Positions 8,239-63,377 of a stretch of DNA of 64,000 bases are shown piece by piece. The notes under the pieces were generated by a model that was given only the letters and a program-made list of their open reading frames with translations, ran no database searches and was not told the origin of the DNA. A program made the translations under genes and the position numbers. This DNA is from Phallusia mammillata (Eukaryota): contig OZ281501.1 of the NCBI GenBank assembly GCA_965637545.1, forward strand, positions 15,252,001 to 15,316,000. The letters run 5' to 3'. Within the stretch, counting starts at the first letter, position 1; every line of letters begins with the position of its first letter.

Positions 8239-11200
8239 TTAGGGATTGTCATTCACCGTGGATTCAATCCAATTTTGGACTTTGGAAACTTCTGTGTAAA
8301 ATGCAGGATACACAAATCCATCTCTGTGAACTTTAGCACATCCGTAGGCAAAACTGGCAATTCCAATTTGGATCCAACACGATTCTCCGGTATTCGGGTT
8401 CTTGTACTTTAAATCAAGGTTGTAACGTTGTTTATTTGCCTAAACCTGTGTCTTAACTTTTAAGCAAAAATGCAGGTCGAGCCTGGTTCGGGCCTCGTTC
8501 GGGCCTATTTTTCTCGTCACAACGGCCTATGTTTAAGTTGGCCAAGCTGTTGCGTTCGATAACGTTAGCTTTCAGGACCAGTCGGGATTTTAAAAATTAT
8601 TCGGCTTTGGACCGTGCTTTGTGCTTTTACTTTAATGTTTGGGCCTTAAAGTTTGGCAAGTTTACTCTTGTCGTATTATCACTGCTTGACCCGGCATTAA
8701 ATGCCTGACAATATTTTGTTTCTTCAAACAAATTAAATGATCACAGACTCAGCATTTAACACGTAAAAACACGTAAATAGTAAATACACAACTTTGTATT
8801 AACACCCAATTGCACATATACCTGTCGCATAAGAGGTACACCACTATCTCCCTGACATGTGCCAGACACTGTATTCAACCACTCGGGACTTTTCACACAA
8901 ATCATGCGATTAGTGTACGATACACGTGTTCCCGATATCGCTTCGATCCTTTCAACCCCTTCATTGCATCTGGTGATACAAGGGTTCAAAAATAATAAAG
9001 CATCACTAATCACCGCTTAAACACTGCCGCAACTAAACACTTTTACAAATTTTTTGACCCACAAGTGGTGATATGTAAATCTTGTCATTTAAATTCGTGC
9101 AGAAAAAATGACTTGCGCAAAACAAAAAGACGATTAAACTTTTAGGAGAATTTTCACTCGATTCCCTACCCTACTTTACGTTAAGAACTACTGGTTAACT
9201 CAAATGGTTTAGCATTAATAACGTGTAACAGAGCGCCAGAACCAAATTCGAACCATAAGGTCTGGTTAAAGGTTGAATAATTGATCAAGGTACGTTTTCA
9301 CGGCTTCATCACATTACTGTTATCAACTCAAACTTACGAGGCATCTGACTGGATTTGTTGGACTGCTTCCTTGAGACTGTACGGAATTGGGACCGTTCTG
9401 TTTTTAAACAAAGCCCATCTACCAAATCCTGTAACAATCAGAGGTATTCTGCTATCTTCAACGTAACGATCGGCAAGCCATCTTCCTGCATACAGAAAGC
9501 GTTGTAAATGCTAGCCTGCGTTGCAATAGCTGTCAAAACCAAACAAGCCAAATTCAAATTGTACATAATTTGTGGGACATTTTGAGGGAACAAAATATAT
9601 AGTCAGAATCAAGAGAGAAAATTTAAACTTGATTCGAAATTTCGGCAAATTTAAAGAGTCCCGTCGATTAAACAATGAGCTCTCGAGCGACACCCTGGTT
9701 TAATATGTAGCAACAATTGTTACGTCACCTGGTACCAAGTACACATGATAAGTGAAAACATGATAATTCGGTAAATGATTTTTACTTTTTTTTAGTCTAT
9801 TGTTTGTTCGTTTTTCTCGCAAGGACGGAATACTATCTAACGGCAAAGTCGGGATTTTAAACATTGATTATTACCAACGTTACTCAGTTGAACTTTCTCC
9901 AAGGCAGTGGTTCTTAACCTTTTTGCTGTGGTTTCCCACTAAAGTCAATTACCAACTTCGAATTCCCCCTCTGTTATTTTTATAGTCATGTTTTGTGCCC
10001 TACGTTAACAAAAAAAATGTAAATGAAATAATTTTGTTAGTTTAGAAAGTGCTTCTGTGAGAGATTAAACTTTTTTAAAAATTGAAGAGTCTGCTCTGCT
10101 TGCATTAGTCATTTGTTGCATCACAATCAACAATGGATAGGCTTTTGTTCATGCACAATAGCAAAGTCATTGATGGTTTTACTCTTCTCTGTGATGTAAC
10201 AAACGACCTTTGAATTTGTATGTGTCTTGTAAACCTTGATAAAATCAATCTAAAGTAACTTTCAACGGTTAGTTTAAAGCCGGATTTGACCCTAGTGCCC
10301 GAGTCTGCTCTTTGAAAGCATACCTAATTTCCCTCCGAATACATTAAATTTCCCACTAGTGGCTGTGCTATAATGCCTAACGATGGATCAACAAATTTCC
10401 CACCGGTTAAGAACCACGGCTCCAAGGGCTATCTCCGAATCATACATGAAATACCAGAAATATAGTGCAGTTGTGACAGAAGTTCTTGTTTACGGAGTTT
10501 TTATGATTTCTAGTGTAATTCTAATATATAACTACGAATTTCTGCGATATTTTAATGAATATTCACAATTGAAATGAACCGCTGTTTTTGCAAAGGTTTG
10601 TTGCACCTGGTGCTGCACGTTCTTTCCACTTGCCTTTCTTTTGACATTTGACATCCTCGGAGTCGCCATTTCCAAATATTTGGTTGCCATTGTGGTCCAC
10701 GTACTTTTCAATGGAGACACAAGTATTGCTGCAGGGCAGACATATTGGTTTCACATAGGGCGAAAGGGGGATAGTTCCGTCAAACTCTGGTCTTCTGCTC
10801 GACCAAACCCAACTTAATCCATCCCTGATGGCGTGAAGTGCCACACCGACTCGAATCTAAACAACTTGTCAACAGTAATCTCAACAACGACCTGGGCAGA
10901 CGTTGTAAGTTTTTACTTTTTACTAGTTAAGCAGTTTATGAAACAACAGTTTAGAGAGATAGTAAAGTTGTCAGTTTACTATTCATTTCGGATGAAAGGT
11001 AAATAAAAAATACTGTCAGTTTACTACTCATTTCGGATGATTTATCGGAAATGCTGTCAGTTTTCGGATCTGTTAAAAGCTTGATATTATATAGAAATGA
11101 TAACTTTATAAAAAAATCAACTTTTTAATTTAAGTTAAAAGCTAAATCAAACCGGATACCCTATTTCTGCATTTTGTTCAAATTGAATGTGAAATGTTTT

Positions 11201-12212
11201 GCTTTATCTCTAAGGCAATTGAAAGCATCACATTTCGTAAATGTTCGTTTTATTTTGGTGCTAAGCAAAATATTGACCACACTTAAGATAAAATTCTACC
11301 AACGCCACGTCATGATCAAAGTTGGTTCTTCCAGCGCCGCGATCTTCTCGCTCAAAATCTTGATGAATAGAAATTCTTCGCGGTTGGAAAACTTTCATGG
11401 CCGGGTTGATGGCTTGCCTCAGCCTTGGCCGCTCGAAAATACCTGACAAAAAGACAAAAGATCACTGATTTCGCGCCATCCGACAAAAGAATACGATACG
11501 ATATTACCCAAGTTGTTTATTACCTACTGCCACAGCCAGTCTGCTTGTCAGCCATTCGATGTCGGCCCAACCGTCAAATATATGAGCGGCTGTAAGGACC
11601 CATTGCTGATTAATGAGGCTTCCACCAGCGAAAATCCGTTTGAAGCTCTGTGGTTGTAAAGAATTACTGCGCGAAACCCATCGAAAATAAAACAGATTCA
11701 AATTGCATTTATTGTTGAATTACTATTTAGAAGCAAGTTTCTCAAAGTAATTTTAAAAAAATGTCTGGTAGTATGCAGACTGTGGCAATTTTCCGGCTTC
11801 TGACATTCGTATCAACTTGCACTACACCTAGTATTATGGCTTGTTTACCATCTTGTGTATTAAGGGTTCATGTTTTTAAAAAATACCGAAATAGCAAACC
11901 GCAGCACAACATAAACATATTATAAACGTAACGTAAAAACATAATGTGATGATAGCCCGCGCTGCAGACAAGTTTTAAAAGAAATGTATCGACCAAAAAG
12001 TTATTACCTAATTTTCAGAACAAATGATTATAACCGCTTTACACGGACATTGTTGTTAAAACTAACTTGGTAAACTGTTGATCCATCGGTAGGCATTATT
12101 GCAGCTTGCCAAGGCCAGGCTCTTTGGGCTTTACTTCCTCCGATGACGCGGCCAAACGCCTTTTTGCGGAGAATACTGTCCTTGTCGCCAGCTTGGCCGC
12201 ATCTCTTTAAAT
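8239..12212 (-). CDS. Gene A serine protease cassette (7 exons; H57/D102/S195 intact)
   Basis: FGR-VIGG...WPWQAA; [19 protein letters not shown]; DHDVAL|IRV; [10 protein letters not shown]; IVTGFG; [13 protein letters not shown]; [13 protein letters not shown]...YPAFYTEVS. Exon lengths 146/124/143/223/148/148/168. Confidence 0.95.
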
Positions 12213-15200
12213 CTGCGTGAGATGTTTATTGCAGACTGTTTTAGTTTAGATATGTAAAAGGTTTATGATGAAAACCTGATAATTGAATTGTAAGACAAGT
12301 TAGATAACACGTTCGTTACTTTTGCCCCATTTACACTGTTTAGATCAGGGGTATCCAACACGTGGCACGCGTGCCAAACGTGGCACGTAGAGCATTTGAA
12401 AATTGCACGCGAGCTTTTGCACATTCAGATCCTTGCCATAGGCGTACAGCTTCAAAAAAATGCCAGAGGTGCGACTTTTGATCAATAGCGCCGATACCTA
12501 TACCATGACCAGTATATATATACCCGTACGATACTTGTGCGGTATGCAACTATATACCTTTTGTGTGTTTTAGCATGTAGTTTCTGTCACATTATATTGT
12601 AAACAGTCACTTGATACATTTCTTTGTGTGGTTGGGGTGTTTGCTGTGCGTCTAATAACCTATGCACATGCTGAAAAGACGATTTGCCGAACCAGTCATT
12701 TTAACAACGATTTTGTTTTTTAAGAACTTGTTACGCAGGAAGTAAAATAAATCCAATTCACGTTTTAAATATAGCTGACCGTGTATCGCTGACGCCTAAA
12801 CTTAGGCCATCTTGAATCAAGTTTGGGCCGTTGCAGTGCTTTGCAAACGGACATTGAACACGGCTTAGGAATCGGTAATGCAAACCTACATAACAACATC
12901 TAAAAGCGGCTATAAACCCTTTGCATTGTTTAATGTTGGCCCATGGAATTTATTAACAAAAAATTACAATTATTATTGTTTCAGAAAGTTATTGCACCAC
13001 ATAATACCAAAACGTTAGTGAACGCGCCATGTTTATGTCGTAATAAAATGCCCGTTTATTTCGAAATAATTGTAATTGTTGCGTTTCAACAAATGTGTGT
13101 TCAATTAATTACGTGACTACAAACGCATTTGTATTTAGTTGGAAAAACATTTTAAACCGACGTAACTTGAGTTTTTGACGCACACAAAGTACTCCAGTGC
13201 CCCATATTTTTCTAACCGTTTAGTAGGGTTCTACATATTGGCCAAATATTCAGATTGAGCCCGTGCCGTTATGACGTTATGACGGGTTAAGACATGGTTT
13301 GGAAAAAGAACCAAAGGCTGGCACGCGAGTATATTTTCGAACGCGGTGTGTTCGAGTTGGACACCCCTGGTTTAGATTAAGCCGACAAGGCAACGGATTT
13401 TTTTATCAAAGGTAGTTGGCACACACATGCCGTTCACAAGCACACTTTCTGCAATTGAATTACAAAACAAAATTTCATGACAGCGATGCGGCAGTTTTCT
13501 TCAGCTATTTTGTGATGGTTTCACTCTTGCTTGCTTTCGTAGACAAAAGTTTTTAACCAATTAATCCGTAAACCAAGGGTCGGCAAACTGTTGCATGCAG
13601 CGGGCTAAAACCAAGATTTGCCAAGTCGGGGCGGGTCGTATGATTTTTTACGTTTGAATTGCGTTCAATTCTAGTCATGTTGTTTGAACTATCGAATACA
13701 GCTTAATTAGATGGGTTAGGTGATGTTTATTTGGCAAAGCATCTCAAAAATAACATGTCAAAACTGGACGAAATTTAGTCATTTTACGTTACCTTCGCTA
13801 ACCTTTTCTTGACACTTATATTACAAAAATTGGATTTAAGGCGATAAAGCTGACCACAACAATTATAAATACATATAACCAGTCGCGACCATGGCTGCGA
13901 AAGTTTCTGTAATTTTGGTCGCCGGGCATTGAACTGTTTTTTGTTGGTCACGCTACAAAGTGTTTCCGGCCCCTTAATTTAGGGCACTTGGAACGCTTTC
14001 GCAACCAAGTTACTTGCACTTGAACTTACTTATGTTGAGTTGTTTTCTCCTTGCTTTTTGGGGTACTTAAACGCGCTTGTTTCCGCTTGTACATTATATT
14101 TTTACTGATGGGGATATTGCTTTTAAAAAAAACATCTGTTTAACTTATTAAAATAATCTTCCACATCGCTGGCGATTAGGTTTTTACTATTTAGGTCCGT
14201 GGCTTGTGTCCTAGGAGTTGTTTGTTTGTTAGAATAACGATTGTGATAAAACAATAACATAGAGGTTGATAAAAAGGCAAAGACCAAGCGGAATTAACAA
14301 CCATGTTGTTCCTCAATATAACGTGGGCAGTTTCTGAAACGGTAGCTGGCCGGATAACTTTACTTGACAGACCTGATCCGAGGGCCGTGAGTTGCCGAAC
14401 CCTGGCGTAAACTTCAGATTCTTGCAGTAGCATTAGCGTGAGGCGAATATTTGTGTTGTCTGCTTCTTAATGCATGTTGACCAAAATTATATTCTGGTCG
14501 TGGTTTGCATTAGAGTTCACATTTGTTTAAATTGATCAACCGGCGATGAAAAAATATCGAGTCACAGTCTAATGGCCGCGATCACGATTTGGTAACCACT
14601 GGTTCGGTTGTTTATTGCAAACTGAGCACAACTAACCGTGTGCACATAAAAAACGGTTTTGGTTTATTCAAACATTTAATTTTATAATTAAAAGCGGGTT
14701 GGATCACTCACCTGTGGTAAAGTTTGCAATTTTGTCGAGGTAGGTGTTGATTAGATAATAGTTCTCCATGCGAATAAAGTTTTCGCGTTTGCTTACCAAC
14801 CGCCTCATCGCTATCTCAGCGTCCCGAGATTCCTGATCGAAATTTTTGCACGACTTGCATGCCGTGACAACGTATATCTAAGATGTAGCTGACCGCGTTA
14901 AATTGTGAGCAACATTTACTCAAAAGCAAAACATTTCTGCAATTGCAACAAATAGGCAAAATGTATCTATGCGTTTATATGCATATTTAGGCAATTATTT
15001 GAATATGATGGTCTTCTATTGTTTCTCGGTTAACTTTTTCTATATTCTAAACTCAAATCATCCAATCCTAAGTTGTTTACTGCTTATTTAAGAGCTAGAC
15101 TCGCTCAGTATTGAAATGTGAAAAATAACTTTCCACTCGACTACAAGTTGTTCGCCCACCGGCTTTAAAATCGCTAAAAAATGAACAAAAAAAAACCCTC

Positions 15201-18200
15201 CCAAAAACAGTTTGCACAAACTTTGAAACACAAATTTTTAAACTGGTCACCTCGAGAACATGACCAAATTCAATTAGCATCGTAGTTCTGGTATGAAACG
15301 GATTTTCTCCTTCATTTGTTTTTCCTGCATGAAACAAATTACCTAATTATGCAACGTTTTAAGACAAATTTTGAGAAATAACTGATGCAACATATTTCTT
15401 TGACCTTTTAGTAAAAAGTTTTGATGCCATACTCTTTTTCTGATGTTTTAAAAGAAATGCCAATACCTAGTTTTGTAGTGACCTTATTAATGACTTGCAT
15501 TACTAAACAATAGTTGTTTAGTTTCAATGACGAGAAACAAACAAACAATGCAAAACTACTTACCATCTGTAAATAAAAAGAAATGTCGTTCCTTGTCGGG
15601 ATCATTGCGAAAGCTTATTACCAATTGTTTGCGAATTTCCTTTAGCGCTATGTTAGTTGCCGTGCAACCTCGTAATATTTCGCTAAAAAGTCCTGCAAAA
15701 AATACATTTTTCTGAAACACAACAAGTCTTACAAAGAAAATTGGCAACTACAGCGCGTTCAACCATGATCCACCAACTGTTTTGCGGTCCAACATCTTTC
15801 ACCATTGTGTAGCATTTCTCTGCTTAGTGGTTGTTTTGGTGCTATTGTTTCGCTAGATTCTCGTTTACTAAACGAAATAAAACTTATACAACTTAACCTA
15901 TGAATTTCTCACCGCTTCTATAGTCCCGTAGACAATCATCAAGTTGTTCAAGAACAGCTGTAGAGTTTTGTTCATTATCTTGTAAACGAATCCTCGCTTC
16001 GAAATCACTACCAAACACCATTAATCCATAATTGATGCTAGCTTGGTCATAATTTGAAAGCTACAAAGGCATGTTACAGTTAATTTAGTCGTTTTTATGT
16101 GCCGCTTTCGAATATTTAACGATCATACCCTTTGTACTAAGTTCTTTGCAAATGCGATTGCGTACATAAACTGGACATCTTTAATACTGTCGGACGCATC
16201 AAATATGAAAGCAATTTCGTGGTGTTTGCTCTCCGTCGTGGAAATCGAACGTCCAAATCCACGCTGAGGGAGGGCTGCAACACTTCCAGCAAGTTTACGG
16301 AGCGAGTCGCTTGCACTGTCTGGGTACCTAGGGTCTGTTAATTGTATAATCACAAGTTAGAAATACTATACTCATGGGTGCCGGCACGTAGCTGCAAGAG
16401 GGGTCAAAAACGAACGAAATCGAGAAATTGAAACCAACGAGTCAAAAAACGAACAAATAGCATCTAAAAAAGAAGAACAGTGCGTAAATGTCATGCTCAT
16501 ATACATTTGTATAAATTTAAAAACGCACATTTTTGGTTGACTGAAGTAAAGAAATGTATTTATTAAAAGATTAGTAGAAAGACATGAATTTAATACACAC
16601 AACTCGCACTGTACGGGATTCGTCAAAGTCATCACCCTCTCTACTTCCGTGAACTGGTACTCCGGGGTCAGGGCATTTACTTGGTTGTCCTAAAGAAGGT
16701 TAGTATTATTTCTTGATTAGTAATCTGATAAAAACGTTTTTACAGTAAAAATTTTTTGATGCATAAAATTTTCATAAAATAGTTAGCAATTCGCGTCAAA
16801 TAGTTAGCAATTAAATACCATGCTACAAGCCTTGTTGAATGTTGGCAAAGTGATAAAGAAAGATTTACAATTAACAAAACTATGTTCTTGATTGGTAAAT
16901 GTGACCTATTTGTTTTCTTATGAGAGGTGTGTGGTAAACGTTTTGTTTAAACTTGCAGACGTTTGAGCTTGCGGAAGTATTTCGAATGAACTACATTCGA
17001 GAACTATTCTTTCCTTTAATAAAATTGGCAGTGATTGCGGATGCACTAAAACGTTTTGAACGAGCTGCACCTGTTGTTGTGTAACAGTGTGTTTGGGATT
17101 GTTGAGTTTGGCAAACATATATTTTTATAGTTACAAACTTGCTCTTGTATAACTTAATTTGGGAGCGTGTTTGCTTTACAAAACATGATTTTAAGTTTGA
17201 CATAAAGAGCCTCATACAAACACATGCACGTTTATAAACTTTGCTGACTGATTAATGCAAGAATATAAGAATTATTTTGCACTGAGAAAAGCAGCAACAA
17301 TTATTTAAAGAGAGCCCGAAAGAATAATTTTATTAAAAATTTGTCGTTCCAAACTAGGTCACACTAAAATATGTACTTTGTCTCGGCCCTCACATCGGGT
17401 AAGGCAATGTTTAAATCTTACCCAACATTTGACATCCCGTCAATAATCCACTCCAACGTCCGTTTTCCATACACGTACGGTTCGCCGCTCCGCTCAAAAC
17501 GTAGCCTGACTGGCAGCGAAATCGCACGGTCGAATTAACAGAGTAAGTACCGTTTCGTCCGGATTCAAGAATTAGATTTCGGCGATCAAGGTGCCTTGTT
17601 GGATCACCACAGAAGATTTCTAAAATTGTTGTTTAAAATACCTAAGTTAAATTATGATTGAAAACTTTCCTAAAACTTGCTTTGGGGTTACATATAGGTT
17701 GTTTCAAAAGTTTGTACCACTTGGACATTTTAGACACCAACCCAACCGTTTAGCCATTTGACCAAACACAACCTCAGTTTGACACACTAAAAATATTGTG
17801 AAATAGAATCTAATGACAGACACATTGGCTAACTTAAGGTTGCAAATTATATTATTGTTTAGTGCAAATCTATGTGATGGAAAGCACAAGTTAAAAAATA
17901 TATAGGTGGATTGATTTACCAATTATAGTGGTACATCTAAAATAGTGTTATTTCACAACATGTTACGTCATAATTACCACATGTCCTCTGCCAAGATTTA
18001 AGCAAACACCAAAAATTACTAAAGCCTTAGTAACCATGCGGCAAGATTTGGATTGTCAAGTAACAATCTTCATTCTTACATCAGGCGTGTGTAATTCTGG
18101 GATCGACCTGTCTGACCTGCAGGGGCATGTTTGTTTCATTATGACGTTTGGTGCCAGCCACGCCCAAAGTTTCAGTTTCAGCTTTTCGCAAAACATACGT

Positions 18201-21200
18201 TTGTGCTTAACTTGGGCAGTTGGAAAGCTTGTTGGTTGGAAAGCTTTAGTTTAACTTGCAAGATTCGTGTTATGTCAGAAAAGGCATTAACTGGAAATAA
18301 CGTTAACGTGTTTACGGTAGGTAACTCATGTAGCTGTTTCATTGCAATGGTAGGGTACTGGTGCTGTAGCATGCGACTGTACAAACCGTGTTAACCAGTT
18401 AACTATTTTAGCAAGTTTTTAACACTGCGTGAAATCATTCTGGTGAATGCAAACTTTTACATTAACTTTAAAGTATAAATGTACTTCGATATGCCAAATA
18501 TGAACATGGATTTTTAGTTTGTTTAAACATGCGCTTACGTTTGGAAAAGCATAGTTTTCGTATGAAATGGAATATTTTACATGTACGCCATTGATCGCGT
18601 AAAATGTGTGTCAGTTTTAATTCAGAAGCTTTCTTAAGATTTACATTTAACTTAAATCTTTGCTTCTGTCAGTCATTAAAGTGAAAAGAAAAATTCGTGG
18701 CATTCAAGGTGGACAAAAAAAAATGCTTCCTAGAATTTTCGGATTTTACCCAATATGTCACAATCAGTTCTTTGAAAAGAGCCAAAGAACACATTCAGGT
18801 AATCTTTTCGTAAAGTACAGGTGCATTTTCAACACAGCAGTATTGTGACGCCACAAACACATAGTTAGTGTAATTGTGATTATTATCGTTGATTTAACAT
18901 TAAACTCGTAGTCAAGCTTTATCGAAACTAAACTATATTGATTGCCTGCGTGGATTTCGTTAAATACCTCACGCTTTTAATTTCTCTTGGCCTGTAAGTA
19001 GCTGTTAATATACTTACATGTTTTTCTTTTTGGTGATAAAAACATGGTATAGAGCTAGGCCAAATCTATAAATCAACATACACTTTCTGCTCCAACCAAC
19101 CTTCACATATCACTGGATCTCCATACCATTGACCGGAACCTGAACATTTGTGTGCAGCGTCTCCACTTGCCAAGTAGTAGCCGGAATCACAAAGATAGTT
19201 GGCAATCCGGTTTACCCGTCATCTGTGTATTCGACTCTTGTGTGTGTCCTAGATGGCGCAGCGGAGCAATTCACATCTAAAACATGCTCATTAAATAAAC
19301 ATGTTTAAAACAACTGCATCGGGATTTGAAACGTCTCTTACGTCTGGTTTTTAGTACAATTTTTATCTCAACACCATCGCCCACAGTTATACCATTAAAC
19401 CAACACAATATTTTATAACTTCTTAAAACAGTTTTAATCAAGTTTTTTTGGCTTGTTTTTTAAATCTCATATTTTCGTTACGTGATTATACCTCTAGTTA
19501 AAGGTTGTGTTTAAACCAGAGAGTCGAACGCGCCGACCGGTTTGAGCGGTTTACTTTATTAAACCTGAATGGAAATTACAATTTTAGTAACCTCCTATCC
19601 GGAGTCGAACCCTATATTTTGTTTAGTGTTGAACCGAACCCGCAAAAATGTAGCCTGTTTAATCTTTCGTGATATTTTTTTCAAAGCAGCGTAACGAAGA
19701 ACAGCTAGGGTGTGTCGAAACCAACGTACTTGAAGCTTGTCCGCAGACACGGTTAAAAACAATGCTATATAGATAATGGATAATAATAAAAAAGGGGGGA
19801 TTGTAATAGAAAAACCGCAAAGGTAATTTGCCCGAACCGGAAATAACCCGAAAACACCTGAATCAAAAGCAACACAAAATGAACCAGAACCCCTAAAACA
19901 AGCGGTTCGACTCCCTGGTTTAATCAAATATATTGGAAATTTCAAGTTATGTATACTTGTGTAGCAACGGTTACTTGTTTCTTTGTTTGGTGTATTTTAT
20001 ACCCAAACATTTCAAAATTCATAGAACCTAATGACTTTAATGTTGACTTACGGGGGTCGACACACTTTCTTCCACATGGACCATCACACATGCATCTCTG
20101 CGTGCCAACACAATCTTCATCTGTGACACAATCTTCTCCACAAGTCAGATTGTAGAGTGTTGCACTGTAGCTATCAGGTCGACACTTAACTGCAACAACA
20201 GAGCTTAATTTGAACGCATGGTTTTTTAAGGTATTTTTTTATTATTTTGCCTTGAATTGAGTTGGGTCTTACACCAAGCGAAATATTAAAACGTAACGTA
20301 AACGCAGTGATGAACCGAGTCGGATTTGTATAGGTTTTGCCAAATCAACTAAATCATCTATGAAGTCGTACGCTACGTGTTTATAGTAAACAAGTTTAAC
20401 TATCAGGCAACCAACTTAGTTTCATTATAAATTAACTCTCCAGCTATTTCATAATGACTTTTAGTCGGATGGAGGCAAAACGATAAAGTTTTAAAGATCT
20501 TAAATTGAACGCGATTTTAATTTTTGCGTAGTTGGAAACATAATTGAGTTCCCTATTAAGCAGAAAAGACGCGTGTCACGCTTTACATTTGTGTTCGTAT
20601 CAAAATCGGTTTGGGCCCAAACGAATGTTCGCGAAAAAGATTGATTCGGCCAAAAAATGTACATCACAAGTATAATAGGCCATTTATTACTTCATCGTAA
20701 AGCAATGTAAATAAATTGGTACCTTGTTACATTGACAGTGCAGTGTAGCACATCCAACTAACATTACTATTCTTTTGCAAGCCTTCGTAAGAGTGTAACG
20801 TATTTTTACCTGTACAGCGCACTTGAGCATCTGTCCACCTTTTGCGCGAAGTACATCGAATTTGAGGACCGATTGAGACCATGCCGGCGGGGCAAGAATA
20901 TTCAACAAAATCATCAAACTGAAAATAGTCTGTCACCCGGACCACGGAATGGTTGACGAAACGATAAATCTTGAATCCAGTGCTTCCGTGTGCCATCGGT
21001 GGATTTCCTTCGCACTCCAAATCTGTGGATTAAAGAATGGATGAAAACTTTAACTGCCAGAAATTCACGTAAGCTCGCTAATTACATTTTATCCGGAACC
21101 AACAATTATTACCATCTTGATAATTTCACAAAAAAAAAATACACTGGTAAGTTTCATTGACATTTTGTTTAATTCGTTTGATAGAAGACTAGTTGTATTT

Positions 21201-23940: not shown

Positions 23941-24185
23941 ACAAAACATATTACCTCGACAACTTGATTGGGTTCTTTTAATATAGTTTTTGTAGAGTTT
24001 TAACAGACTTACTAACACAGGAGACGGTTCTTGGGTTGACATTCCATCGTTTGGTTATTTTGCAGGTATATGTGACAGAAATCTGATATCTTATGCTGTA
24101 AATCTTATAACCGTTTCGGCATATGTAACTGACTCTAGTTCTAGGAAGGTGATATCCATGATTTTCACGAGGGTATGTGAACGTT
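23941..24185 (-). pseudogene. Decayed, deleted copies of the two CCP exons at 38080-38579
   Basis: YPRENHGYHLPRTRVSYICRNGYK...RWNVNPRTVSCV vs [24 protein letters not shown]...[12 protein letters not shown]. First Cys and acceptor are lost, and only ~20 nt of the next exon's 3' end remains at 23955-23974. Confidence 0.85.
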
Positions 24186-24199
24186 TCTTTCCACAAATT

Positions 24200-53138: not shown

Positions 53139-56100
53139 TTATGGATAATTGCAATAGTCGTATTTACCAATGGTTATATCAATCCAACTCTGAACTTTGG
53201 AAACATCGGTATAAAATCCTGGATAGCGGAAACCTGTAGTTCTGTCTACTTTACCACATCCGTATCCAAAACTGACGATTCCAACTTGAATCCAACACGA
53301 ATCTGAAGTGTTTGGGATTTCGTACTGCCAATAGAATTTTTTTAACATTGTTTCCAAAGTCTACTCAGAAAGATTGTTGCATGGCAGATTTGACCACGGC
53401 ACATTAGGCCTACTAGATTAAGATAGGTTATGCTACCAAACAATTAATTATTTAAACAACTAGGTATTATTTTTTTAATTAACTTTTTACTTATTGTACA
53501 CAATTCATTGTTTTCTCCTTGTTTACTAAATTACAGACACCTCTGCAACATATAAAATTCAACAACAGATATGCAACATTTGAGATTTAAAAACAGCTCT
53601 GCGACATTTTTTTCCCTATCTTTTCCCGCCAGCTCAGACAATTAAAATATTCAAAAAAGCTTTATTTTTATAAATCCTAGCTTTATAACTACGATTTAGG
53701 CAAATAGCCAAAACATTCTAAATTCAAACTTTACTTCAAGTGAGGCAGGTTATTGCGCTGTGTCAGAATTGGTATTAAGTTATTAAGTATTGTACAAAAT
53801 ATCGTTGTACCACTGTTAAACTGATAGCGTTTTTTTTTTATAGATTTCAGCGTGATGTCTGCATTTTCTTTTGCTAACATACCTTTCGCATCAAAGGTCC
53901 ACCGCTGCTACCCGAACAAACATCCGATACTTTACTCGTTTCAGGTCGAGCACAAATCATACGGTCCGTATACCTTACATCCAGTAAAGTTTCATCTGCT
54001 ATTTTGTTGACAGCAATTTTACATCTGAAGATGAAAAAGACTATTCTAGATTAAGACTAAACACTACTCTATATGAAGAGTCAGATCGAATAGCATTTTG
54101 CCTTACATTGTGTCAGGTTGAATTTGTTCAGTTGTTTGTTGAAGTTCGAATGGCATTACTCTGCGTGTCAAATCCGTATAATAGAAACCTGTGACGAACA
54201 TCGGTGCTCGATCTTTAGTGTAATGATTCGCAAGCCACTTTCCTAAAAGCAAAATAGTCTTGTACCGCGTTGTTGGGTTATTTTTATCCTAATTGTCTCG
54301 CATCGAATTTTATTAGCTTCACAGTTCAATAGTATTCAACTGCAATAAGACATTAATCAGTATTTCACTTTAATGCATGTTTCGTTGAAAGTCACATCAA
54401 ATCTTTCCATGTAGCCCGGACATCATTTATAAGAAGTATAGTTAATCACACAATAGTTTAGCCAATATGATGCTTGACTGGAAGTTACCTTTCTTGAAAC
54501 ATTTTACACCTTCGGAGTCATTCTCGTTTATTAGTCTGCTTCCATTTTGGAACAAGTAGTTTTCTATCGAAATACATGAGTTACTGCAGGGAAGACATAT
54601 AGGGTTCACATAGGTTGAGAGTGGAATTGTCCCATTAAACTCAGGTGCACTGTCGGTCCAAATCCACTCTCCATTTTCTTTGATGGTACGAAGCTCTATG
54701 CCCACGCGAATCTGAAAAAATGATAACAGCCATATTGTAGAATGATACTTCTCTTTTTCTTTTGTGCCTAGAAAGGGGAAATGCCTTGTTAACTCACACG
54801 GCTGGAATCCCCCTGCAAATATTTTTTGAAGGTCACTGCATCGATTCGAAACTAACACTGATTTTGATTTGCAAAATGATGTTGGCCTAGGTCCAATAGT
54901 ACCCTGCTCGATTTGAGATAATTTGTGGTCGTTTAATACTTCACAAACTTTTAATCTTACCAGTGCAACATCGTAATCATAATTGCTTCTGCCATGTCGA
55001 TCAGATCGATCGAATCTGTCATGTACAACAATATTTCTCGGTTGAAACACAATAACATTCGAGTCGATTTTACTTCTTGTATTGTCAGGTCTTCTGAAAA
55101 TCCCTTTCAAAATAGATGAGAAGTTTGTTGTTTCATGTAACATAGGATGCAAATCCCTGGCATTTTTTTATCTTTTATTACCTACGGCCACTACGAAGCG
55201 TTTTGTCCAATTCTCAATGTTGGAGTAACGATCAAATATATGTGCTGCTGTAAGAACCCAATGTTGATTAATCAGACTTCCACCAGCAAAACTACTCGCG
55301 AAGCTCTAAACAATCACAAAAAGTCGACCAAGTTAGCCATCAAGACCGAGGAATAAAAGTAAAATCGTTTTCTGTCAAGCTGTTTGTTTAAGATTTTGTT
55401 TTGGGGTCTAATAAAACTGTACCGTTGCTTACGTTATATACTTTTCCATTGTTAACCATAATTAAAGCTTGCCATGGCCAAGACCTGTCTGCATCAATTC
55501 CTTCGACAACTCGACCAACGGATCGGGGAGGTGAAGTGCTTATGCGGTTTACAGTTTGTCCACACTTCAGTTTTATACCTACATAAAAATATTAGACTGT
55601 CAAAACAAATTTGCTTAATGCCGTTTCATAAAACCGTGAATAATGCGCATGCGTTGAGAAGGCAATCTGCAACTTTCGCAAACTGAATTGGAATATTTTA
55701 ACTTTTGTCATTCGGTTATTTCAAAAAAATTCGTTAAACTTATACTCAGAAAATTTATAAGATTTTATTTGCTGTTTGATGTTAGGATTTTTAGTGGAAT
55801 ATAAAGGCTTGCTTACAGTAAACCAGCTTTATATGGTTGAAAAACTTAAATCTATAACAATAGCATACTTCTTGCTCTAAAGTAAATTCGCTCACCTGTG
55901 CAATTCGCCATTCCTTCCCAAGTAGCGTTTTCATTGCAAACTGCCCAAGTGCTTCCAATGTTCTCATAACCTATGTCACAGGCAAACTCAATCCGAGACC
56001 TGTAGGTGAAATCAATTCCCTCGGATACGACAAAACCATAATCAGGTGCTACAGGTTCACTGCATCGTAAAACTGTCACAAACATATAAATATCGAAGTT

Positions 56101-57395
56101 TATCGCTGCAAACCAAGTGGTTTTGAACGGAAAAAATGAAACATATGAATTTACCAAGTCAAGACGATTTAAAGAAATCTGAAGCGACGAAAGAACTCAC
56201 TTAAACACCGTGCTGCTGTCCCCGACCATTTCTTGTCACTACGACATGAACGGACAGCGTTTCCCCTTAACACCCAGCCTGGATGGCAACGATATTCAGC
56301 CTGAGATCTGTATCTTGTGTTTCGTGAACGATAAATGACTCTTCCAAACAAAATTACTGGTAATCTGGCACACTCCGCATCTGTTGACGCAAAACGCGAT
56401 AATAAGCTCAGCAGAAAACATCAGTAAAGACATTGTTTGTTTTTTTCATGTTGTGGACAAACTCTTTGATCATATTCATAAACAAGATTTTTGAAGGTCA
56501 TTAAATTGATATCAGTGAACAAATACTTTACGATTTCAACTGTGGCGTTTATAAATACCGTTGTGGAGTTTTTGCAGGCTAAATGGGCAATAAATGTTGA
56601 CGTATCTCACGACTAAATAAATTCAAGGTAAAAAATATATTTAACAATCAAATAATAAGGGCAAGAACAATGCATAAAATTAGAAACCATTCACAACAGC
56701 AATTTAATTTTGTGCGATAAACTTAACTTTGTGCAATTATATTAACCAACCTATGACAAAATTAGAATCAAAACCTTTCACATACCTTTTACTCAAACAT
56801 ATTTCACAATCATTTTTTGCGTAACTTAATTTCGTGAAACGAAGGTGTCTCAAAACCGACACAAAAGTAAAAATCCCGACTTCTTCTGCTCGTGTTTACA
56901 GATATTACCTGGCAATCTATGTTTTAATTCCATTACCATGAACTTACTTGGGTTGAAACACGACATGCCACAAACATCGTCACATCGGCACCGCTTCAGG
57001 CGCCCTCTGCAATCTGAATCGCTTGAACACGGTTTCCGACAAAATCTGCCAAACTCGATGCGACTCAGATCTCTGCTGGAGCAAATTGTTGGTGAAGAAC
57101 CTGCAAAAAATATTCAACTAGTACTAACAATCCTAAAAGCATTTAATTCGTGTTTGCCTGTAAAAGATACAACAATAAAAGGAAATACTGTACATCATCC
57201 TAAAATAAGTTGGAAACGATGGGTCAAAATTTATCTTTGAATTAAACACGACGCTACATCAATACAGTAAATGTAACCGTCGCGTTACAAATTTGATTGC
57301 AAATAAATAGTAACTGATACTTCTTACTTACCAGGTCGTACAATTGAAACTGAACGACAGAATAGTGACAAAAAGAATATACACAAGGTTTTCAT
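53139..57395 (-). CDS. Gene C: complete secreted WAP-CCP-CCP-serine protease (factor B-lineage, no vWA; D194S)
   Basis: Signal 57395-57332 MKTLCIFFLSLFCRSVSIVRP; WAP 57100-56948; CCP 56380-56201, 56072-55896; protease 55578-55433, 55305-55182, 55103-54961, 54711-54489, 54242-54107, 54024-53883, 53324-53139. All GT-AG, in frame, no stops. Confidence 0.93.
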
Positions 57396-57744
57396 CCCAA
57401 TCCTCTAGTTTTCCTGCAAAATACACATCAGTATTAATACTAATTAAATTGATGCAATTTTTGCCAGGGCTGCAATTAAACATTAAATTACAAAAAAATA
57501 CTTTTTGACATTATAGCAACAAATGTAACTGCGATTGATAAATCGGCTGCGACAGTTATGTTTTATTCTAAACTAATCAAGCTCAAGTACCTCCTAGTGT
57601 TTTCAAGCACTATTCCTTCTGCAAGCGAGTTACAACTGTGACAAACATTGCAAGGTGCCAAAAACGAGCAGCTACATACAAAGTGCAGGACAGGAAGTTG
57701 TTATAACTATTTGCGAACCGCTGAAAGTTCACGTTTCATTCGAC

Positions 57745-59255: not shown

Positions 59256-62230
59256 CAAGGGCGAAAATCCATTAAAATTATTTGGGGGGGACCTACGACC
59301 GCTGTGAGTAGATGACGTCACCTCGATTGGAGAAGTCATGACGTCACCAAAAAGATTTGACAACAGATAATACGTTGCCTCGAAACCTTTGCAGCAAACG
59401 TAAGAAGGAAAAAAGAAAACAGATTTTAAGTTTTAACATTTTTGTGTATTGTAAACAAACAACAAAATAACAAACGAAAAAATCTATGACACATAATCAG
59501 TTTTGTTGTCAAACATGTCCAAACATGTTTCGACGAATTTCCGAAACAGTAACAAACTCTTTAGTGGTTTCTTCAACCGGTACTTGATCGAGTAAATCTG
59601 AATGCACGTGACAAACAGCTAGATGATTTAAGCGAACCTGGGTAGTCGTGCTTCTTAGCCAAGTTTTTAGACTCCGAAGTGTTGAAAAACTTCGCTCGCA
59701 TTCACAAGAGCTGACAGGGCACACCAAAAGCAGTTTGAGCAAAATAAACACCTGTGTGAATAACTGGCGTAGCTCGGAACTCATAGCGCGATAAGCTAAC
59801 TTCGCTTCATTTACAGAACTTGCCCCCGTGTGCTGCTTAAACATCGGCAACTGTACAGATAGTTGAGTTACATTCAATTCGGGATATTTTGAAATTAAAT
59901 CTAAATTTGTTGCTGTGCCCTTCATTATCATATTTTCGATTTCCAAATATGTTTGGAAGCTTGAGTTGCGGACATCATACCGTTTCTGCAAACACCCAAG
60001 TAAACAGTCAATAAACTCCACGTACAACAATCTGTAATGGTCTTTGGCACATTCGGCGTGGAAGTGCGGTGAGGATCCAGCGAAAAGCGGTGTCGGCTGC
60101 CGACGGCGTGGCACAGAAATTTCATCAAGCCCCAAATTCGCTGATATCTTTGTTGCTTCATCAAAAAGGTTCGTGTACATTATAGGGTCACGAAATACTT
60201 GTATCTGCTTCGCTGTTGTCGCTACAGCCTCTATTGAACCTGCATAACATACAAACCTAAGCATTCTGTGTCTAAAAATTGGTACAATTTACTACCTGAT
60301 AAATTTGAAGAAGATGCCTGCATCGAGCTGTTTAGTTGTTCCAGCAGAGCTATTGGTTTTTTAACAAGGTATAAAGCTAAGAATGTTTCGGTTTTCTCGA
60401 AACGATTCAAAAGAGCATTGGCTTTGGTGGCAGAATCTGTACTCCCCTCCGACATGCTGCGAAGACTTTCAGTTACAGCAGAATAATTTTCCAATACCGA
60501 TAAAATTGCCGACAATCGACAAAGCCAACGAGTTGGACAAAGCGGCCGAATCGATGCTTTTGTATTGATGAACTCCGTACTACAAGCAACAACGCTTTCA
60601 AACACAACCTGCAAACATTAATCATGATTTAATAATCACATAAAAAAACGCATAAAATAGTTACGTCGCATTACCTTAAACTTTCCAGATCTCTTAAATA
60701 ACACGCCGAGTTCATGGACCCATTGGACGGCGTCCCTGAAAAATGGACAACTTGCAATTGATTCCTGCATAACCAAGTTTGCTAATTGTGACTGGCAATG
60801 GAAATATGTGGCGAGTGGGTACTGACTGCTAATAACGGCTTGACACCCATTGTACTTCCCACTCATATTTGAGGCTCTGTCGTACGTTTGTGCACGTGTT
60901 TGACCAGCAGATAGGGAAAATCGAGTCAGAACGTCTAAAATTATCCTTGCAATTGCATCTCCAGTTGTCTGCTGCATTTTGTGCAGACCCAGAAAATCTT
61001 CATGTACACATAGCTCCGAATCGACATGGCGGATGCAAACAGACTCCAGCTCACTTCCACAAATATCTTGTGTGCCGTCGACCATCACTGCGAACATACC
61101 ATTGGCTTTAATTTTAGACGCTAAAATTCGTAAAATAAAGTGACTGAACATTTGTGTCATTTCCTACTGACCACGAAATGAGGTGAAGTTGGTTTTTCGC
61201 TGGAGGAACTCTTTTAACTCGGAACTATCTTCAGCACGAAGTTTTAGGAGTTGGTGGTAATTTCCTTCTCCCTCGTCATGGCCTCGGATAGCAAGACCTT
61301 GTCGCAACAAATATCGCAACGACGTGAACAATTTTATCAGCGATCGCCTGGCGGCAGCTTGTTGTTCGTTAAAGCCTGTGTTTATTTGAAGTGCAACAGA
61401 CTTCCGCTTTATGGCATCTAGTTGCATGGTGGCAAAGGTATGTGTTTCTGTTAGTTGGTGCAAATCAAATGAACTCTTTCCCTTTTTTCCAGTTTCGAAA
61501 ACCGTCTGATATAAACGCAGGCTCTTTTTTTGAACTGCGTGCAACAAACCCAGTTTGTCTGCTTTTGAACAAATAAAACAGAGCACCCCATTAACACCTG
61601 GTACGCAATGGATCCACGGGAATAAAACATACCACTTGGTCTGAAATTTTACAAATATACCGCCGCAGTTCTTTGCTGGCAAATGGCTTACATCTTCTGG
61701 TTGGTTCGGGCAGGATTGTGACAAAAGATCCGCAGAATTTATTTCTGTTAAACAGGAGTTGCTTCCCCCATCTGTTGTTGTGGAACTGGTTTTACCTTTG
61801 AGTATTTTCAATTCCTTCTCTACTAAAACACTTTCAGGCACTGCAGAATTGACCTTATTTACTTTCCTCAAGTTTGTTTTTCCACTCGCTGCGTTGGAAA
61901 CGAAATACTGTTCTATCTTGCTAACTTTAAGCCGTTTAACGTTTTGAGACATTATTCTTGTAGTGCCGCAAATATTCCATCAACTAAATGCACTGTCAAG
62001 CTTTTTGCACAGATATCAAACAATTCGATTGAGTTCCATTGTTGACAACAATGTGGATTATGAAGTAGTATTATGTCGTTAGATTTGTGTGATATTTAAC
62101 AATAGACTTATATCTTATTTTTAGCTCAAGGGTAATAAAAATATTGGGGGGACAGATGAATGGAAGTAGCCCCCCAACCACATTTTTGGGGGGACAAGTC
62201 CCCCCCCGTCGTCCCCCCGTAAATGTTGCT
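59256..62230 (-). mobile_element. Near full-length ZMYM1-like hAT transposon; transposase pseudogene with two introns
   Basis: ORFs 61952-59509: TTF-type zinc finger FPW..CFIC; RYLLRQGLAIRGHDE; FAVMVDGTQD; YFHC; LCPTRW; PVSSCECERSFSTLRSLKTWLRST. In-frame TAG at 61164. GT-AG introns ~60670-60613 and ~60295-60240. Right boundary approximate. Confidence 0.88.
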
Positions 62231-63209
62231 TGGGTGGTATAGCTGCCTGTTAGGAACTTCTTGGTGCTGGCATTGCCGAGTCTGAAGGTTAGTAATAGAA
62301 GACAGCTTGACCAATTAAGTCGCCAATTTAGCAACTGTTTTCTTTTCGTCGTTTGATCCTTTATTCCCGGGGTCGACAACCTTTTTTGTACTTCCGGGGC
62401 AGTGTTTGAAGCAAAGTGGTATTTTTAACCTAAAAGCAGGGTAATACACAGCAAACTTGCTTACCGCAGTAGGTTGTTCTTGCGATAGAATGACTCTGTT
62501 TTCCCCCTTGCATACTATAGAATAATTATATCCTTTTGGTCAGTGCACTGTAACGTCGAAGTTTAGATGGCTATATTGTACAGGCGACAAGCAGCAATAA
62601 TAAGGTCTTAATCAACTAAGTGAGAAAACTAGAGGGTTATGGAAACTTTAAACCAGGGTATGGATCAGACGTTTGGAATCAATGGATAAAAAAATTTCAA
62701 ATATAGTTTTATTTTCAACCATCTGCCTCGCTTTGCCTGGAGATCACATAAAAACCGAATAAGAAATATTTCTTGTCGAGGCAAGTTTTAGTGACAATTA
62801 CATTTTCAGAAGTTTGCTTTGAGCAAAATACACCTTCAAAAAGAGCAAAGAGACATTAATGCACATACAACTGAAACACTAACTATGGAACAAGAAAATT
62901 CTAATTTCAAATTAATTTCCAGAATCATTGAGGGTGCATTAAAACTATAATTACAAAGAAGAAACATTACAAAGTCTTAACAAATTGTTTAAAAAGTTTG
63001 ATGCTACAAATCTATGTATATTTACAAACCTAATTAATATATTTGTATGACATTCATCGGATAAAATTAACACACAAATTTTGGTAAACAAGGCGATTAA
63101 CAAAACAAAAACGTTGAAAACAAGATGAGTATATTTTGAGTAAACTTTTTCGAGTTTGTTTACAAAATTGCCCCGATGTGTAAACAGCAATTATGGCTGC
63201 CACACATAT

Positions 63210-63377
63210 TTAGGGATTATCATTCATCGTGGATTCAATCCAACTTTGGAACTTGGAAACTTCTGTGTAAAATGAAGGAAACACAAATCCTTTTCTGTCA
63301 ACGTGAGCACATCTGTAGCCAAAGCTGACAATTCCAACTTGAATCCAACATGATTCGCCGGTGTTCGGGTTGTTGTA
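63210..63377 (-). CDS. Gene D: last protease exon of a fourth paralog (rest lies beyond the window)
   Basis: tttaaAG|[55 protein letters not shown]. 168 nt, as in A and B. Confidence 0.92.
   Translation of the reverse strand, partial: YNNPNTGESCWIQVGIVSFGYRCAHVDRKGFVFPSFYTEVSKFQSWIESTMNDNP

What the first reader, a model, noticed from the sequence alone, without database searches (positions are those of the whole stretch)
8239..63377. Tandem family of factor B-lineage proteases: one 7-exon protease cassette on different module chains
Seen: A, B and C share seven protease exons with identical intron positions and phases and near-identical lengths (146/124/143/223/148 or 136/148 or 142/168 or 186), and D supplies a fourth last exon. 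Upstream modules differ: LDLa-WAP-CCP-WAP-CCP-CCP-CCP-vWA (A), CCPx5-MAM-EGF-CCPx3-WAP-CCP (B) and WAP-CCP-CCP (C). Non-vWA modules are phase 1-1 units. Known: PICLPC...C and (F/W)IQVGVISWG-type motifs are factor B/C2 hallmarks, and Ciona has triplicated Bf genes with LDLa and extra CCP domains, all keeping vWA. Inference: this is a diversifying complement-like protease cascade built by exon shuffling, including factor B-type enzymes with no vWA. I know no description of such vWA-less forms.
Basis: partly seen in the sequence, partly recalled or inferred. Interest (0 to 1): 0.85.

Follow-up and report, generated by a model that had tools for sequence, protein, structure and literature searches.

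The report
Factor B-type proteases without vWA domain
A sea-squirt gene cluster reuses one seven-exon protease unit, inherited from complement factor B, behind different chains of small binding modules, and two copies lack the vWA domain that factor B uses to dock on C3b; such forms occur across tunicates but I found no paper describing them.

Summary
The core observation holds. On the minus strand, genes A, B and C each carry a seven-exon serine-protease (SP) cassette. Exon lengths are 146/124/143/223/148/148/168 in A and B, and 146/124/143/223/136/142/186 in C. Intron phases are identical, and D contributes a fourth last exon.

A tree, an AU test, shared intron positions and sequence motifs place the cassette in the factor B (Bf) lineage. 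B and C have no vWA: the last CCP exon lies about 300 nt from SP exon 1.

- The cassette is the standard tunicate Bf gene structure, and vWA-less relatives already sit unnamed in Styela, Clavelina and Phallusia protein sets.
- A is damaged, with a frameshifted CCP2 exon and half of CCP4 missing.
- B's long CCP-MAM-EGF chain is not shown to belong to B. In the Phallusia homologue its first CCP is spliced onto C's protease. A signal-peptide-like exon also lies upstream of B's WAP.
- The N gap lies in an intronic inverted repeat, between two phase 1-1 exons.
- C carries Asp194Ser and A carries Gly189.
- "Cascade" and "diversifying" are untested.

The scan had already noted A (s1-388506), D, and a further copy in this genome.

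The parts
8239..12212 (-). Gene A: seven-exon Bf-type SP cassette. Exons: 12212-12067, 11647-11524, 11442-11300, 10856-10634 (GC donor), 9485-9338, 8969-8822, 8406-8239. His57, Asp102 and Ser195 are present, but residue 189 is Gly and the motif reads GDSGVP.
14713..16335 (-). Gene A: linker plus vWA exons (16335-16126, 16060-15908, 15702-15559, 15337-15212, 14877-14713). The DxSxS MIDAS motif is present.
16595..16693 (-). Gene A: first half only of the fourth CCP. The second half seen in homologue P0001 is absent between 16595 and 16335.
17422..17619 (-). Gene A: CCP3 exon, phase 1-1.
19102..19277 (-). Gene A: CCP2 exon of 176 nt. There is a one-base frameshift near 19215, in a G run, relative to P0001.
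20052..22240 (-). Gene A: LDLa (22240-22112), WAP1 (21569-21429), CCP1 (21022-20810) and WAP2 (20189-20052). All are phase 1-1.
22666..22711 (-). Gene A: candidate signal-peptide exon with a phase-1 donor.
   Evidence: P0001's N-terminus is similar
24013..25062 (-). Intergenic remnant between B and A. It holds an orphan CCP6-like fragment (24132-24013, 3 Cys). It also holds a copy (24181-25062) of the region upstream of gene C (57731-59257, 83-90% identical).
26359..30630 (-). Gene B: seven-exon SP cassette. Exons: 30630-30485, 30050-29927, 29851-29709, 29432-29210 (GC donor), 28864-28717, 27112-26965, 26526-26359. All canonical residues are present (His57, Asp102, Asp189, Asp194, Ser195), with an activation site GR|LLGG.
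30927..31407 (-). Gene B head: WAP (31407-31261) and CCP9 (31100-30927), both phase 1-1. Only 296 nt separate CCP9 from SP exon 1, so there is no room for a vWA.
33162..33210 (-). Candidate signal-peptide exon upstream of B's WAP: ATG, a hydrophobic core and a phase-1 GTGAAG donor. Unverified.
35149..35325 (-). Module chain: CCP8, phase 1-1.
35832..37838 (.). Inverted repeat (arms 35832-36607 and 37060-37838, 96% identical) enclosing the N gap at 36671-36870. It is intronic and no Pfam family was found in it.
38080..43755 (-). Module chain: CCP3 (43755-43579), CCP4 (41855-41679), CCP5 (41150-40974), probable MAM in about three exons (40188-39391), EGF (38834-38724), CCP6 (38579-38361) and CCP7 (38268-38080). 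CCP3, 4, 5 and 8 are recent tandem copies (85-94% nt identical).
44000..51000 (.). G+C-rich (42-45%) insert inside the 7.8-kb interval between CCP2 and CCP3. It has no long ORF and no Pfam or Rfam match.
51526..52548 (-). Module chain: CCP1 (52548-52369) and CCP2 (51702-51526, a paralogue of C's CCP2, 79% nt identical). No signal-peptide candidate lies between C's stop codon and CCP1.
53139..55578 (-). Gene C: seven-exon SP cassette. Exons: 55578-55433, 55305-55182, 55103-54961, 54711-54489, 54242-54107, 54024-53883, 53324-53139. The active-site motif reads GSSGGP (Asp194Ser) and the activation site reads GR|VVEG. An internal phase-1 donor TTG|GTAAAT sits at 53169/53168, eight codons before the stop.
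   Evidence: RNA joints for exons 2-3-4
55896..57395 (-). Gene C head: signal exon (57395-57332), WAP (57100-56948), CCP1 (56380-56201) and CCP2 (56072-55896). Only 317 nt separate CCP2 from SP exon 1.
   Evidence: splice joints 57330|57098 and 56948|56380 in RNA contigs
59509..61952 (-). hAT-type transposase-like ORFs (DUF4371 and the hAT dimerisation domain) between C and D. Not part of the protease family.
63210..63377 (-). Gene D: last SP exon (168 nt, AG acceptor, TAA stop). The rest of D lies beyond the window end.
   Evidence: earlier notes s1-344578 and s1-344583

Best explanation
The window holds part of a tandem cluster of ascidian genes. The nearest database proteins are from Phallusia mammillata. 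All the genes use the tunicate version of the complement factor B serine-protease gene unit: seven exons, entered in phase 1, with fixed internal intron positions.

Gene A carries the unit behind LDLa-WAP-CCP-WAP-CCPs-vWA, a two-WAP form of the tunicate Bf architecture, but A is damaged in this assembly. Genes C (signal-WAP-CCP-CCP-SP) and B (WAP-CCP-SP) carry it directly after a CCP, with no vWA.

B looks like a hybrid. Its head is an old C-type head. Its whole protease unit, introns included, was recently copied or converted from an A-type gene, and the tract starts at the acceptor of SP exon 1.

Inferred mechanism:
- The vWA-less proteins are secreted zymogens, cut at Arg|Val or Arg|Leu in the GR|(V/L)xxG site.
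- The pro-piece stays tethered by the Cys of the (K/R)CGQ motif, paired with the PICLPC cysteine, as in thrombin or chymotrypsin.
- Without a MIDAS-bearing vWA they cannot dock on C3b as factor B does.
- Their targets must therefore be chosen by the WAP and CCP modules, as the CCP-CCP-SP units of MASP, C1r and C1s do.
- B has every residue needed for trypsin-like (Arg/Lys) activity. C (Asp194Ser) and A (Gly189, GDSGVP) may be weakened.

Shown: gene structure, lineage, absence of vWA, and the extent of the duplicated tract. Inferred: secretion of B, the activation mode, substrates, and any role in complement.
For: - Exon chains and splice sites.
- Domains.
- vWA matches only in A. The CCP-to-SP introns are 296 nt and 317 nt.
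- Tree: tunicate SP clade 100/96, sister to lamprey Bf 99/93, inside the Bf clade 93/94, with win_A+win_B+P0001 and win_C+P0003 each at 100.
- AU test against a MASP affinity: p = 0.006.
- Intron positions are identical 6/6 to Ciona Bf-1, Styela Bf, and the vWA-less Styela and Clavelina SPs. Lamprey Bf shares two exactly.
- The CLPC motif is shared with lamprey Bf. The loss of Cys42/58 is common to all tunicate SPs.
- P0003 from P. mammillata has the same WAP-CCP-CCP-SP order and is 83% identical to C in the SP.
- Spliced contigs from the same species label confirm the signal|WAP|CCP1 joints and the SP exon 2|3|4 joints of a C-type transcript.
- Intronless Logan contigs encode complete vWA-less CCP-SP proteins of this clade.
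- A-B exons are 79-90% identical and introns 70-83%. Homology ends at 12214/30632, and the upstream intron is at shuffled level.
- B's WAP is 80% aa identical to C's WAP against 64% to A's WAP1. B's CCP9 is 54% identical to C's CCP1 against 25% to A's CCP1.
- The AlphaFold model of the P0003 SP (pLDDT 89.8) is a classical chymotrypsin fold. Its N-terminal piece aligns with the thrombin light chain, Z about 34.
Against: - No jawed-vertebrate Bf/C2, C1r/C1s or authentic MASP sequences were in the tree. The Bf clade itself has 93/94 support, not starred, and the AU group was named after the tree had been seen.
- Against solved structures, thrombin, kallikrein and tryptase outrank factor B by sequence and by fold.
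- No read evidence exists for B, for the CCP-to-SP exon 1 junction in this genome, or for the 3' ends.
- The RNA contigs are only 92-95% identical to the window, so they may come from an allele or a paralogue.
- A has two lesions, and C has Asp194Ser where its Phallusia counterpart is canonical. Some copies may therefore be decaying.
- Gene boundaries between C, the CCP-MAM-EGF chain and B are unresolved.
Confidence: 0.7

Rival explanations
1. C, the CCP-MAM-EGF chain and B are not three units. They form one long gene, or overlapping isoforms. The SP cassette is then an internal phase 1-1 module: signal-WAP-CCP-CCP-SP-CCPs-MAM-EGF-CCPs-WAP-CCP-SP. A short isoform would end at C's own stop codon.
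For: - C's last exon holds a strong phase-1 donor (TTG|GTAAAT) exactly where P0003 from P. mammillata continues into a CCP. That CCP is 86% identical to the exon at 52548, and CCP6- and CCP7-like modules follow it.
- A, B and D lack this donor.
- Styela P0007 and Clavelina P0019 also splice in phase 1 just after the SP, with a stop 5-13 codons further on if the site is left unspliced.
- P0007 has the same overall order: WAP-CCP-SP-CCPs-WAP-CCP-vWA-SP.
- No signal-peptide exon lies between C's stop codon and the first chain CCP.
- Short RNA contigs lie on that CCP exon.
Against: - Fused models of tandem genes are a common prediction artefact. Whether P0003 rests on a real cDNA was not verified here.
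- A signal-peptide-like exon lies 1.75 kb upstream of B's WAP.
- A 7.8-kb interval with a G+C-rich insert, and an inverted repeat with a gap, interrupt the chain.
- In the Styela locus, a separate gene model (Sushi-MAM-Sushi-Lectin_C-Sushi) is called inside the range of P0007.
- No read crosses the 53168-to-52548 junction.
Confidence: 0.3
2. The vWA-less copies, and A, are non-functional products of segmental duplication in a fast-turning-over cluster. They would be gene relics rather than enzymes.
For: - A has a frameshift and a half CCP.
- C carries Asp194Ser and VVEG, and A carries Gly189.
- An orphan CCP fragment and a duplicated upstream segment lie between B and A.
- Transposon-like insertions are present.
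- A-B dN/dS is 0.42.
Against: - B and C keep open frames and consensus splice sites over 9-11 exons each.
- dN/dS is well below 1 (0.24 for A-C and 0.23 for B-C).
- The C-type architecture is conserved in P. mammillata with canonical residues, and C-type transcripts are spliced as predicted.
- vWA-less relatives are expressed in other tunicates.
Confidence: 0.15
3. The protease unit is not of factor B descent. It would be a tunicate family of CCP-linked proteases related to MASP, factor C or coagulation proteases, and the Bf-like motifs would be convergent.
For: - The PDB sequence search and the fold searches rank thrombin, kallikrein, tryptase, uPA and MASP-1 above factor B.
- The histidine-loop disulfide is missing, as in the MASP-like rows. 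From my own knowledge, not tested here, MASP-2, C1r and C1s also lack it.
- Some Styela relatives are auto-named "clotting factor C-like".
Against: - The tree, the AU test, the shared introns and the CLPC motif.
- The same cassette sits behind a vWA in cloned Ciona and Halocynthia Bf.
- Published trees also place ascidian Bf nearest to vertebrate Bf/C2 (PMC4714745).
Confidence: 0.07

Closest known systems
Ascidian complement factor B (Ciona intestinalis Bf-1/2/3; Halocynthia roretzi Bf)
   Same: - Same SP clade.
- All six internal SP introns are identical in position and phase, and the entry phase is 1.
- Loss of Cys42/58, the PxCLPC motif and a GR|V(I/L)GG-type site are shared.
- A shares the LDLa, extra CCPs and vWA.
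- Tandem triplication is described for Ciona (Yoshizaki 2005, cited in PMC4714745 and PMC5465252).
   Different: - B and C have no vWA and no LDLa.
- WAP modules are not among the extras reported for ascidian Bf in PMC4714745, which lists only LDL_A.
- A has two WAPs interleaved with its CCPs.
MASP / C1r / C1s catalytic region (CCP-CCP-SP)
   Same: - The layout of C (CCP-CCP-SP) and B (CCP-SP).
- An Arg|Ile-type activation site, with the pro-part held by a disulfide.
- No histidine-loop disulfide.
   Different: - The SP has a different descent.
- No shared introns: the MASP-like SP is a single exon, or is split at other sites.
- No CUB or EGF_CA head. WAP takes that place.
Vertebrate factor B / C2
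   Same: - Sister relation through lamprey Bf (99/93).
- Two introns are shared exactly.
- CLPC, YDYDVAL and WIQVGI(V/I)S(W/F)G-type motifs are shared.
   Different: - The vWA is absent in B and C.
- The tunicate SP is about 360 aa and lacks Cys42/58.
- The model looks like a conventional cleaved-zymogen protease, not specially like the solved mammalian Bf or C2a.
Polyserases (TMPRSS9-type multi-protease proteins)
   Same: If the read-through isoform is real, several SP domains would sit in one polypeptide. Styela relatives are auto-named TMPRSS9-like.
   Different: Unrelated SP lineage, used as the outgroup. The array here is not membrane-anchored. The multi-SP state is unproven.

Membership tests
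Complement factor B / C2 family | SP domain descends from the Bf/C2 protease (phylogeny) | tested here: met
   Caveat: lamprey, echinoderm, arthropod and coral Bf stood in for jawed-vertebrate Bf/C2.
Complement factor B / C2 family | Shared SP intron positions and phases with accepted Bf genes | tested here: met
   6/6 with Ciona Bf-1 and Styela Bf. 2/6 exact with lamprey Bf. 1-2 with crinoid Bf. 0 with MASP-like.
Complement factor B / C2 family | CCP(n)-vWA-SP architecture | tested here: not met
   Met only by A, which is damaged. B and C have 296-nt and 317-nt introns between the last CCP and SP exon 1. No vWA match exists outside A.
Complement factor B / C2 family | MIDAS motif in the vWA for Mg2+-dependent C3b binding | tested here: inconclusive
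   A has the DxSxS motif and the downstream Thr and Asp positions. The test does not apply to B and C.
Complement factor B / C2 family | C3/C5 convertase activity after binding C3b and cleavage by factor D or MASP | not testable with these tools
   Needs biochemistry.
Chymotrypsin-fold (S1) serine proteases | His57, Asp102 and Ser195 triad with an Asp194/Ile16 activation switch | tested here: met
   The triad is present in A, B and C. Asp194 is present in A and B but is Ser in C. Asp189 is present in B and C but is Gly in A. The fold is confirmed on homologue P0003.
MASP / C1r / C1s family | CUB-EGF-CUB-CCP-CCP-SP architecture and the MASP-type SP lineage | tested here: not met
   No CUB was found in any module exon. 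The SP falls outside the MASP-like group, and the AU test rejects the union.
WAP four-disulfide core domain | Eight-cysteine WAP pattern above the Pfam threshold | tested here: met
   A WAP1 scores 26.5 bits, A WAP2 27.1, B 28.7 and C 22.8, against a cut-off of 20.8. Each has 8 Cys in one phase 1-1 exon.

The most novel reading that the evidence does not exclude
In tunicates the whole seven-exon Bf protease unit may behave as a symmetric phase 1-1 module. A conserved donor just after the protease would let it be read through into the next gene's module chain. Tandem arrays such as C-chain-B would then yield both single-protease and double-protease mosaic proteins. That would be a Bf-derived protease system, independent of C3b docking, with no counterpart in vertebrates.
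Probability: 0.25. Interest if true: 0.75.

Novelty: new variant of a known kind. Interest (0 to 1): 0.55.

Why it matters
Factor B is treated as defined by CCP-vWA-SP. Reviews state that all characterised invertebrate Bf keep this architecture (PMC4714745, PMC11312191). Here, and in three other ascidian genera, the Bf protease unit has been moved onto heads that cannot dock on C3b.

Three consequences follow:
- Counts such as "17 factor B genes" in Styela (PMC7540406) may mix true Bf with a separate protease family.
- The locus gives a dated example of cassette-level exon shuffling or gene conversion, with both breakpoints visible.
- It raises a testable question: did tunicates build MASP-like, cleavage-activated enzymes from the Bf protease?

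Tried and rejected
- A whole-protein search with P0001 was swamped by Sushi-rich proteins and gave no Bf/C2 set. The region search recovered tunicate, lamprey and invertebrate Bf, but no jawed-vertebrate Bf/C2 among the rows listed.
- The PDB sequence search and two fold searches gave generic S1 proteases, with thrombin and kallikrein on top. They could not speak to lineage.
- An exact exon model for MAM could not be fixed. There were 4189 frame-compatible combinations and only weak homology to a Styela MAM exon.
- Pfam and Rfam found nothing in the G+C-rich 44-51 kb insert or in the gap-flanking repeat.
- The 28-nt side of the RNA joint 56201|51702 cannot be told apart from the paralogous exon at 56072, so I did not use it to link C to the chain.
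- Yoshizaki 2005 and Nonaka & Kimura 2006 are not held in the library.
- B, A's lesions and the C read-through junction therefore remain unread.

Full report
**What is there.** All the genes lie on the minus strand, and the only N run is 36671-36870. Motif scans and six-frame ORFs showed three PICLPC sites and four (V/A)SF(G/A) C-terminal exons.

Chaining AG/GT sites gave three open seven-exon protease (SP) units:
- A, 12212-8239.
- B, 30630-26359.
- C, 55578-53139.

The donor of exon 4 is GC in A and B and GT in C. D's last exon is 63377-63210. The entry phase is 1, and the six internal introns fall at aligned residues 48, 89, 137, 211, 260 and 310, with phases 0/1/0/1/2/0, in all three genes.

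**Modules.** Phase 1-1 exons with the expected cysteine counts were found for every non-vWA module, and Pfam recognised them.
- A: LDLa, WAP, Sushi, WAP, Sushi, Sushi, then vWA.
- The long chain: five Sushi, EGF, three Sushi, WAP, Sushi.
- C: WAP, Sushi, Sushi.

MAM is only probable: a C-terminal Pfam match below threshold and an N-terminal MAM-like exon. vWA homology exists only in A. The introns between the last CCP and SP exon 1 are 296 nt in B and 317 nt in C, so these two genes have no vWA.

**The gap.** The gap lies inside a 785-nt, 96% identical inverted repeat (35832-36607 / 37060-37838). The repeat sits in the intron between CCP7 and CCP8. Both exons are phase 1-1, so the frame does not depend on the gap length. 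An exon hidden inside the gap cannot be excluded. I did not try to fill it.

- A's CCP2 exon is 176 nt. Against the 1018-aa Phallusia mammillata protein P0001, which is 80-97% identical per exon, one base is missing in a G run near 19215.
- The second half of A's fourth CCP has no counterpart between 16595 and 16335.
- A also has Gly at position 189 and the motif GDSGVP.
- C has GSSGGP (Asp194Ser) and VVEG, while its Phallusia counterpart P0003 is canonical.
- B is canonical throughout.

**Lineage.** A 74-aa exon search of 1.8 billion proteins found P0001 and P0003, both from P. mammillata and both auto-named CiBf-3. It also found Styela proteins. Further searches gave Bf-like and vWA-less relatives from Styela, Clavelina, Ciona and Halocynthia, and Bf from lamprey, echinoderms, arthropods and a coral.

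A careful IQ-TREE analysis of 64 SP domains gave this picture:
- All 39 tunicate SPs form one clade (100/96).
- That clade is sister to lamprey Bf (99/93).
- It lies inside a clade of vWA-bearing Bf (93/94).
- MASP-like and TMPRSS9-type domains fall outside.
- A, B and P0001 group at 100/100. C and P0003 group at 100/99. All five together group at 100/100.

Forcing the tunicate SPs to join the MASP-like domains costs 26 log-likelihood units (p-AU 0.006). That group was named after the tree had been seen.

As an independent test I mapped exact exon boundaries in seven fetched loci.
- Ciona Bf-1, a Styela vWA-bearing Bf, both SPs of Styela P0007 and the vWA-less Clavelina P0019 share all six introns with the window cassette.
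- Lamprey Bf shares two exactly.
- A crinoid Bf shares one or two.
- MASP-like SPs share none.

The CLPC motif is shared with lamprey Bf, and every tunicate SP lacks Cys42/58. A published tree likewise puts ascidian Bf nearest to vertebrate Bf/C2 (PMC4714745).

Sequence and fold searches against solved structures ranked thrombin, kallikrein and tryptase first. This shows a conventional S1 fold but says nothing about descent.

**How the cassette moved.** A and B align through exons (79-90%) and introns (70-83%), from the SP exon 1 acceptor (12214/30632) to about 55 nt past the stop. The intron just upstream is no more alike than shuffled sequence.

B's head is C-like. Its WAP is 80% aa identical to C's, against 64% to A's WAP1. 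Its CCP9 is 54% identical to C's CCP1, against 25% to A's CCP1.

B is therefore a C-type gene whose whole protease unit was recently replaced by, or converted from, an A-type unit. dS is 0.29 for A-B against about 1.6 for either gene compared with C. dN/dS is 0.42 for A-B and 0.23-0.24 for comparisons with C.

CCP3, 4, 5 and 8 are recent tandem copies. An orphan CCP6-like fragment and a copy of C's upstream region lie between B and A.

**Gene boundaries.** Signal-peptide exons are plausible for C (57395-57332), for A (22711-22666) and 1.75 kb upstream of B's WAP (33210-33162). None lies between C's stop codon and the first chain CCP.

P0003 runs from the C-type SP straight into a CCP matching 52548-52369, then into CCP6- and CCP7-like modules. 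The window keeps a strong phase-1 donor (TTG|GTAAAT, 53169/53168) at that very spot. A, B and D do not have it.

Styela P0007 and Clavelina P0019 have the same arrangement.

**Expression.** One read-laying run was allowed, and I laid it on 51450-57449. Run X2 behaves as DNA.

Contigs of runs X4 and X5, guessed to be RNA, are 92-95% identical to the window. They carry canonical joints at 57330|57098, 56948|56380 and 56201|next CCP. One contig links SP exons 2, 3 and 4 of C. Short contigs also lie on the 52548 CCP exon.

Nothing was read for B. Intronless Logan contigs encode complete vWA-less proteins of this clade in other samples.

**Mechanism (inferred).** The AlphaFold model of the P0003 SP (pLDDT 89.8) superposes on thrombin with Z about 34, and its N-terminal piece aligns with the thrombin light chain.

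This fits activation by cleavage at the GR|(V/L) site, with a disulfide-tethered pro-piece. Without a vWA, target choice must fall to the WAP and CCP modules, as it does to the CCP modules in MASP and C1s.

**Literature.** In the searchable library, every described Bf keeps CCP-vWA-SP (PMC4714745, PMC11312191). Reviews of tunicate immunity mention only Bf and MASP (PMC5465252). The Styela genome paper counts 17 factor B genes without giving architectures (PMC7540406). No description of vWA-less Bf-type proteases was found. Key subscription papers could not be read.

**Verdict.** This is a real, well-delimited family, and the Bf descent of the cassette is well supported. The vWA-less forms are genuine at the DNA level, and C-type forms are also supported at the transcript level. 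The phenomenon is tunicate-wide rather than special to this window.

Noticed in passing
window 2300-5900: A satellite-like array of units of about 179-196 nt (81-86% matches). Its translations recur in all minus-strand frames.
   Followed up: partly
window 59509-61952 (-): Three adjacent ORFs of a hAT-type transposase (DUF4371 and the hAT C-terminal dimerisation domain) lie between genes C and D.
   Followed up: partly
window 35832-37838: A 96% identical inverted repeat with 785-nt arms encloses the assembly gap. ORFs in the arms have no Pfam match. It could be a foldback element or an assembly artefact.
   Followed up: partly
window 44000-51000: A G+C-rich block (42-45% against about 36%) with no long ORF and no Pfam or Rfam match. 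It sits between two CCP exons, and its nature is unknown.
   Followed up: partly
window 24181-25062 and 57731-59257: The region upstream of gene C is duplicated (83-90% identical) between B and A. A CCP6-like exon fragment follows directly at 24132-24013. This looks like the remnant of a further rearranged gene copy.
   Followed up: no
window 10634/10633 and 29210/29209: The donor of SP intron 4 is GC (AAG|GCAAGT) in both A and B but GT in C. The GC-AG intron was carried along with the duplicated cassette.
   Followed up: yes
L006 8464-14952 (Styela clava): Inside the range of the two-protease model P0007, a separate gene model is called: Sushi-MAM-Sushi-Lectin_C-Sushi. This parallels the CCP-MAM chain between C and B in the window.
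   Followed up: no
L008 and L009 (Logan contigs of SRR32906208 and SRR32906214): Intronless contigs encode complete vWA-less Sushi-SP proteins of the tunicate Bf-type clade (570 and 1151 aa). The organism was not identified.
   Followed up: partly
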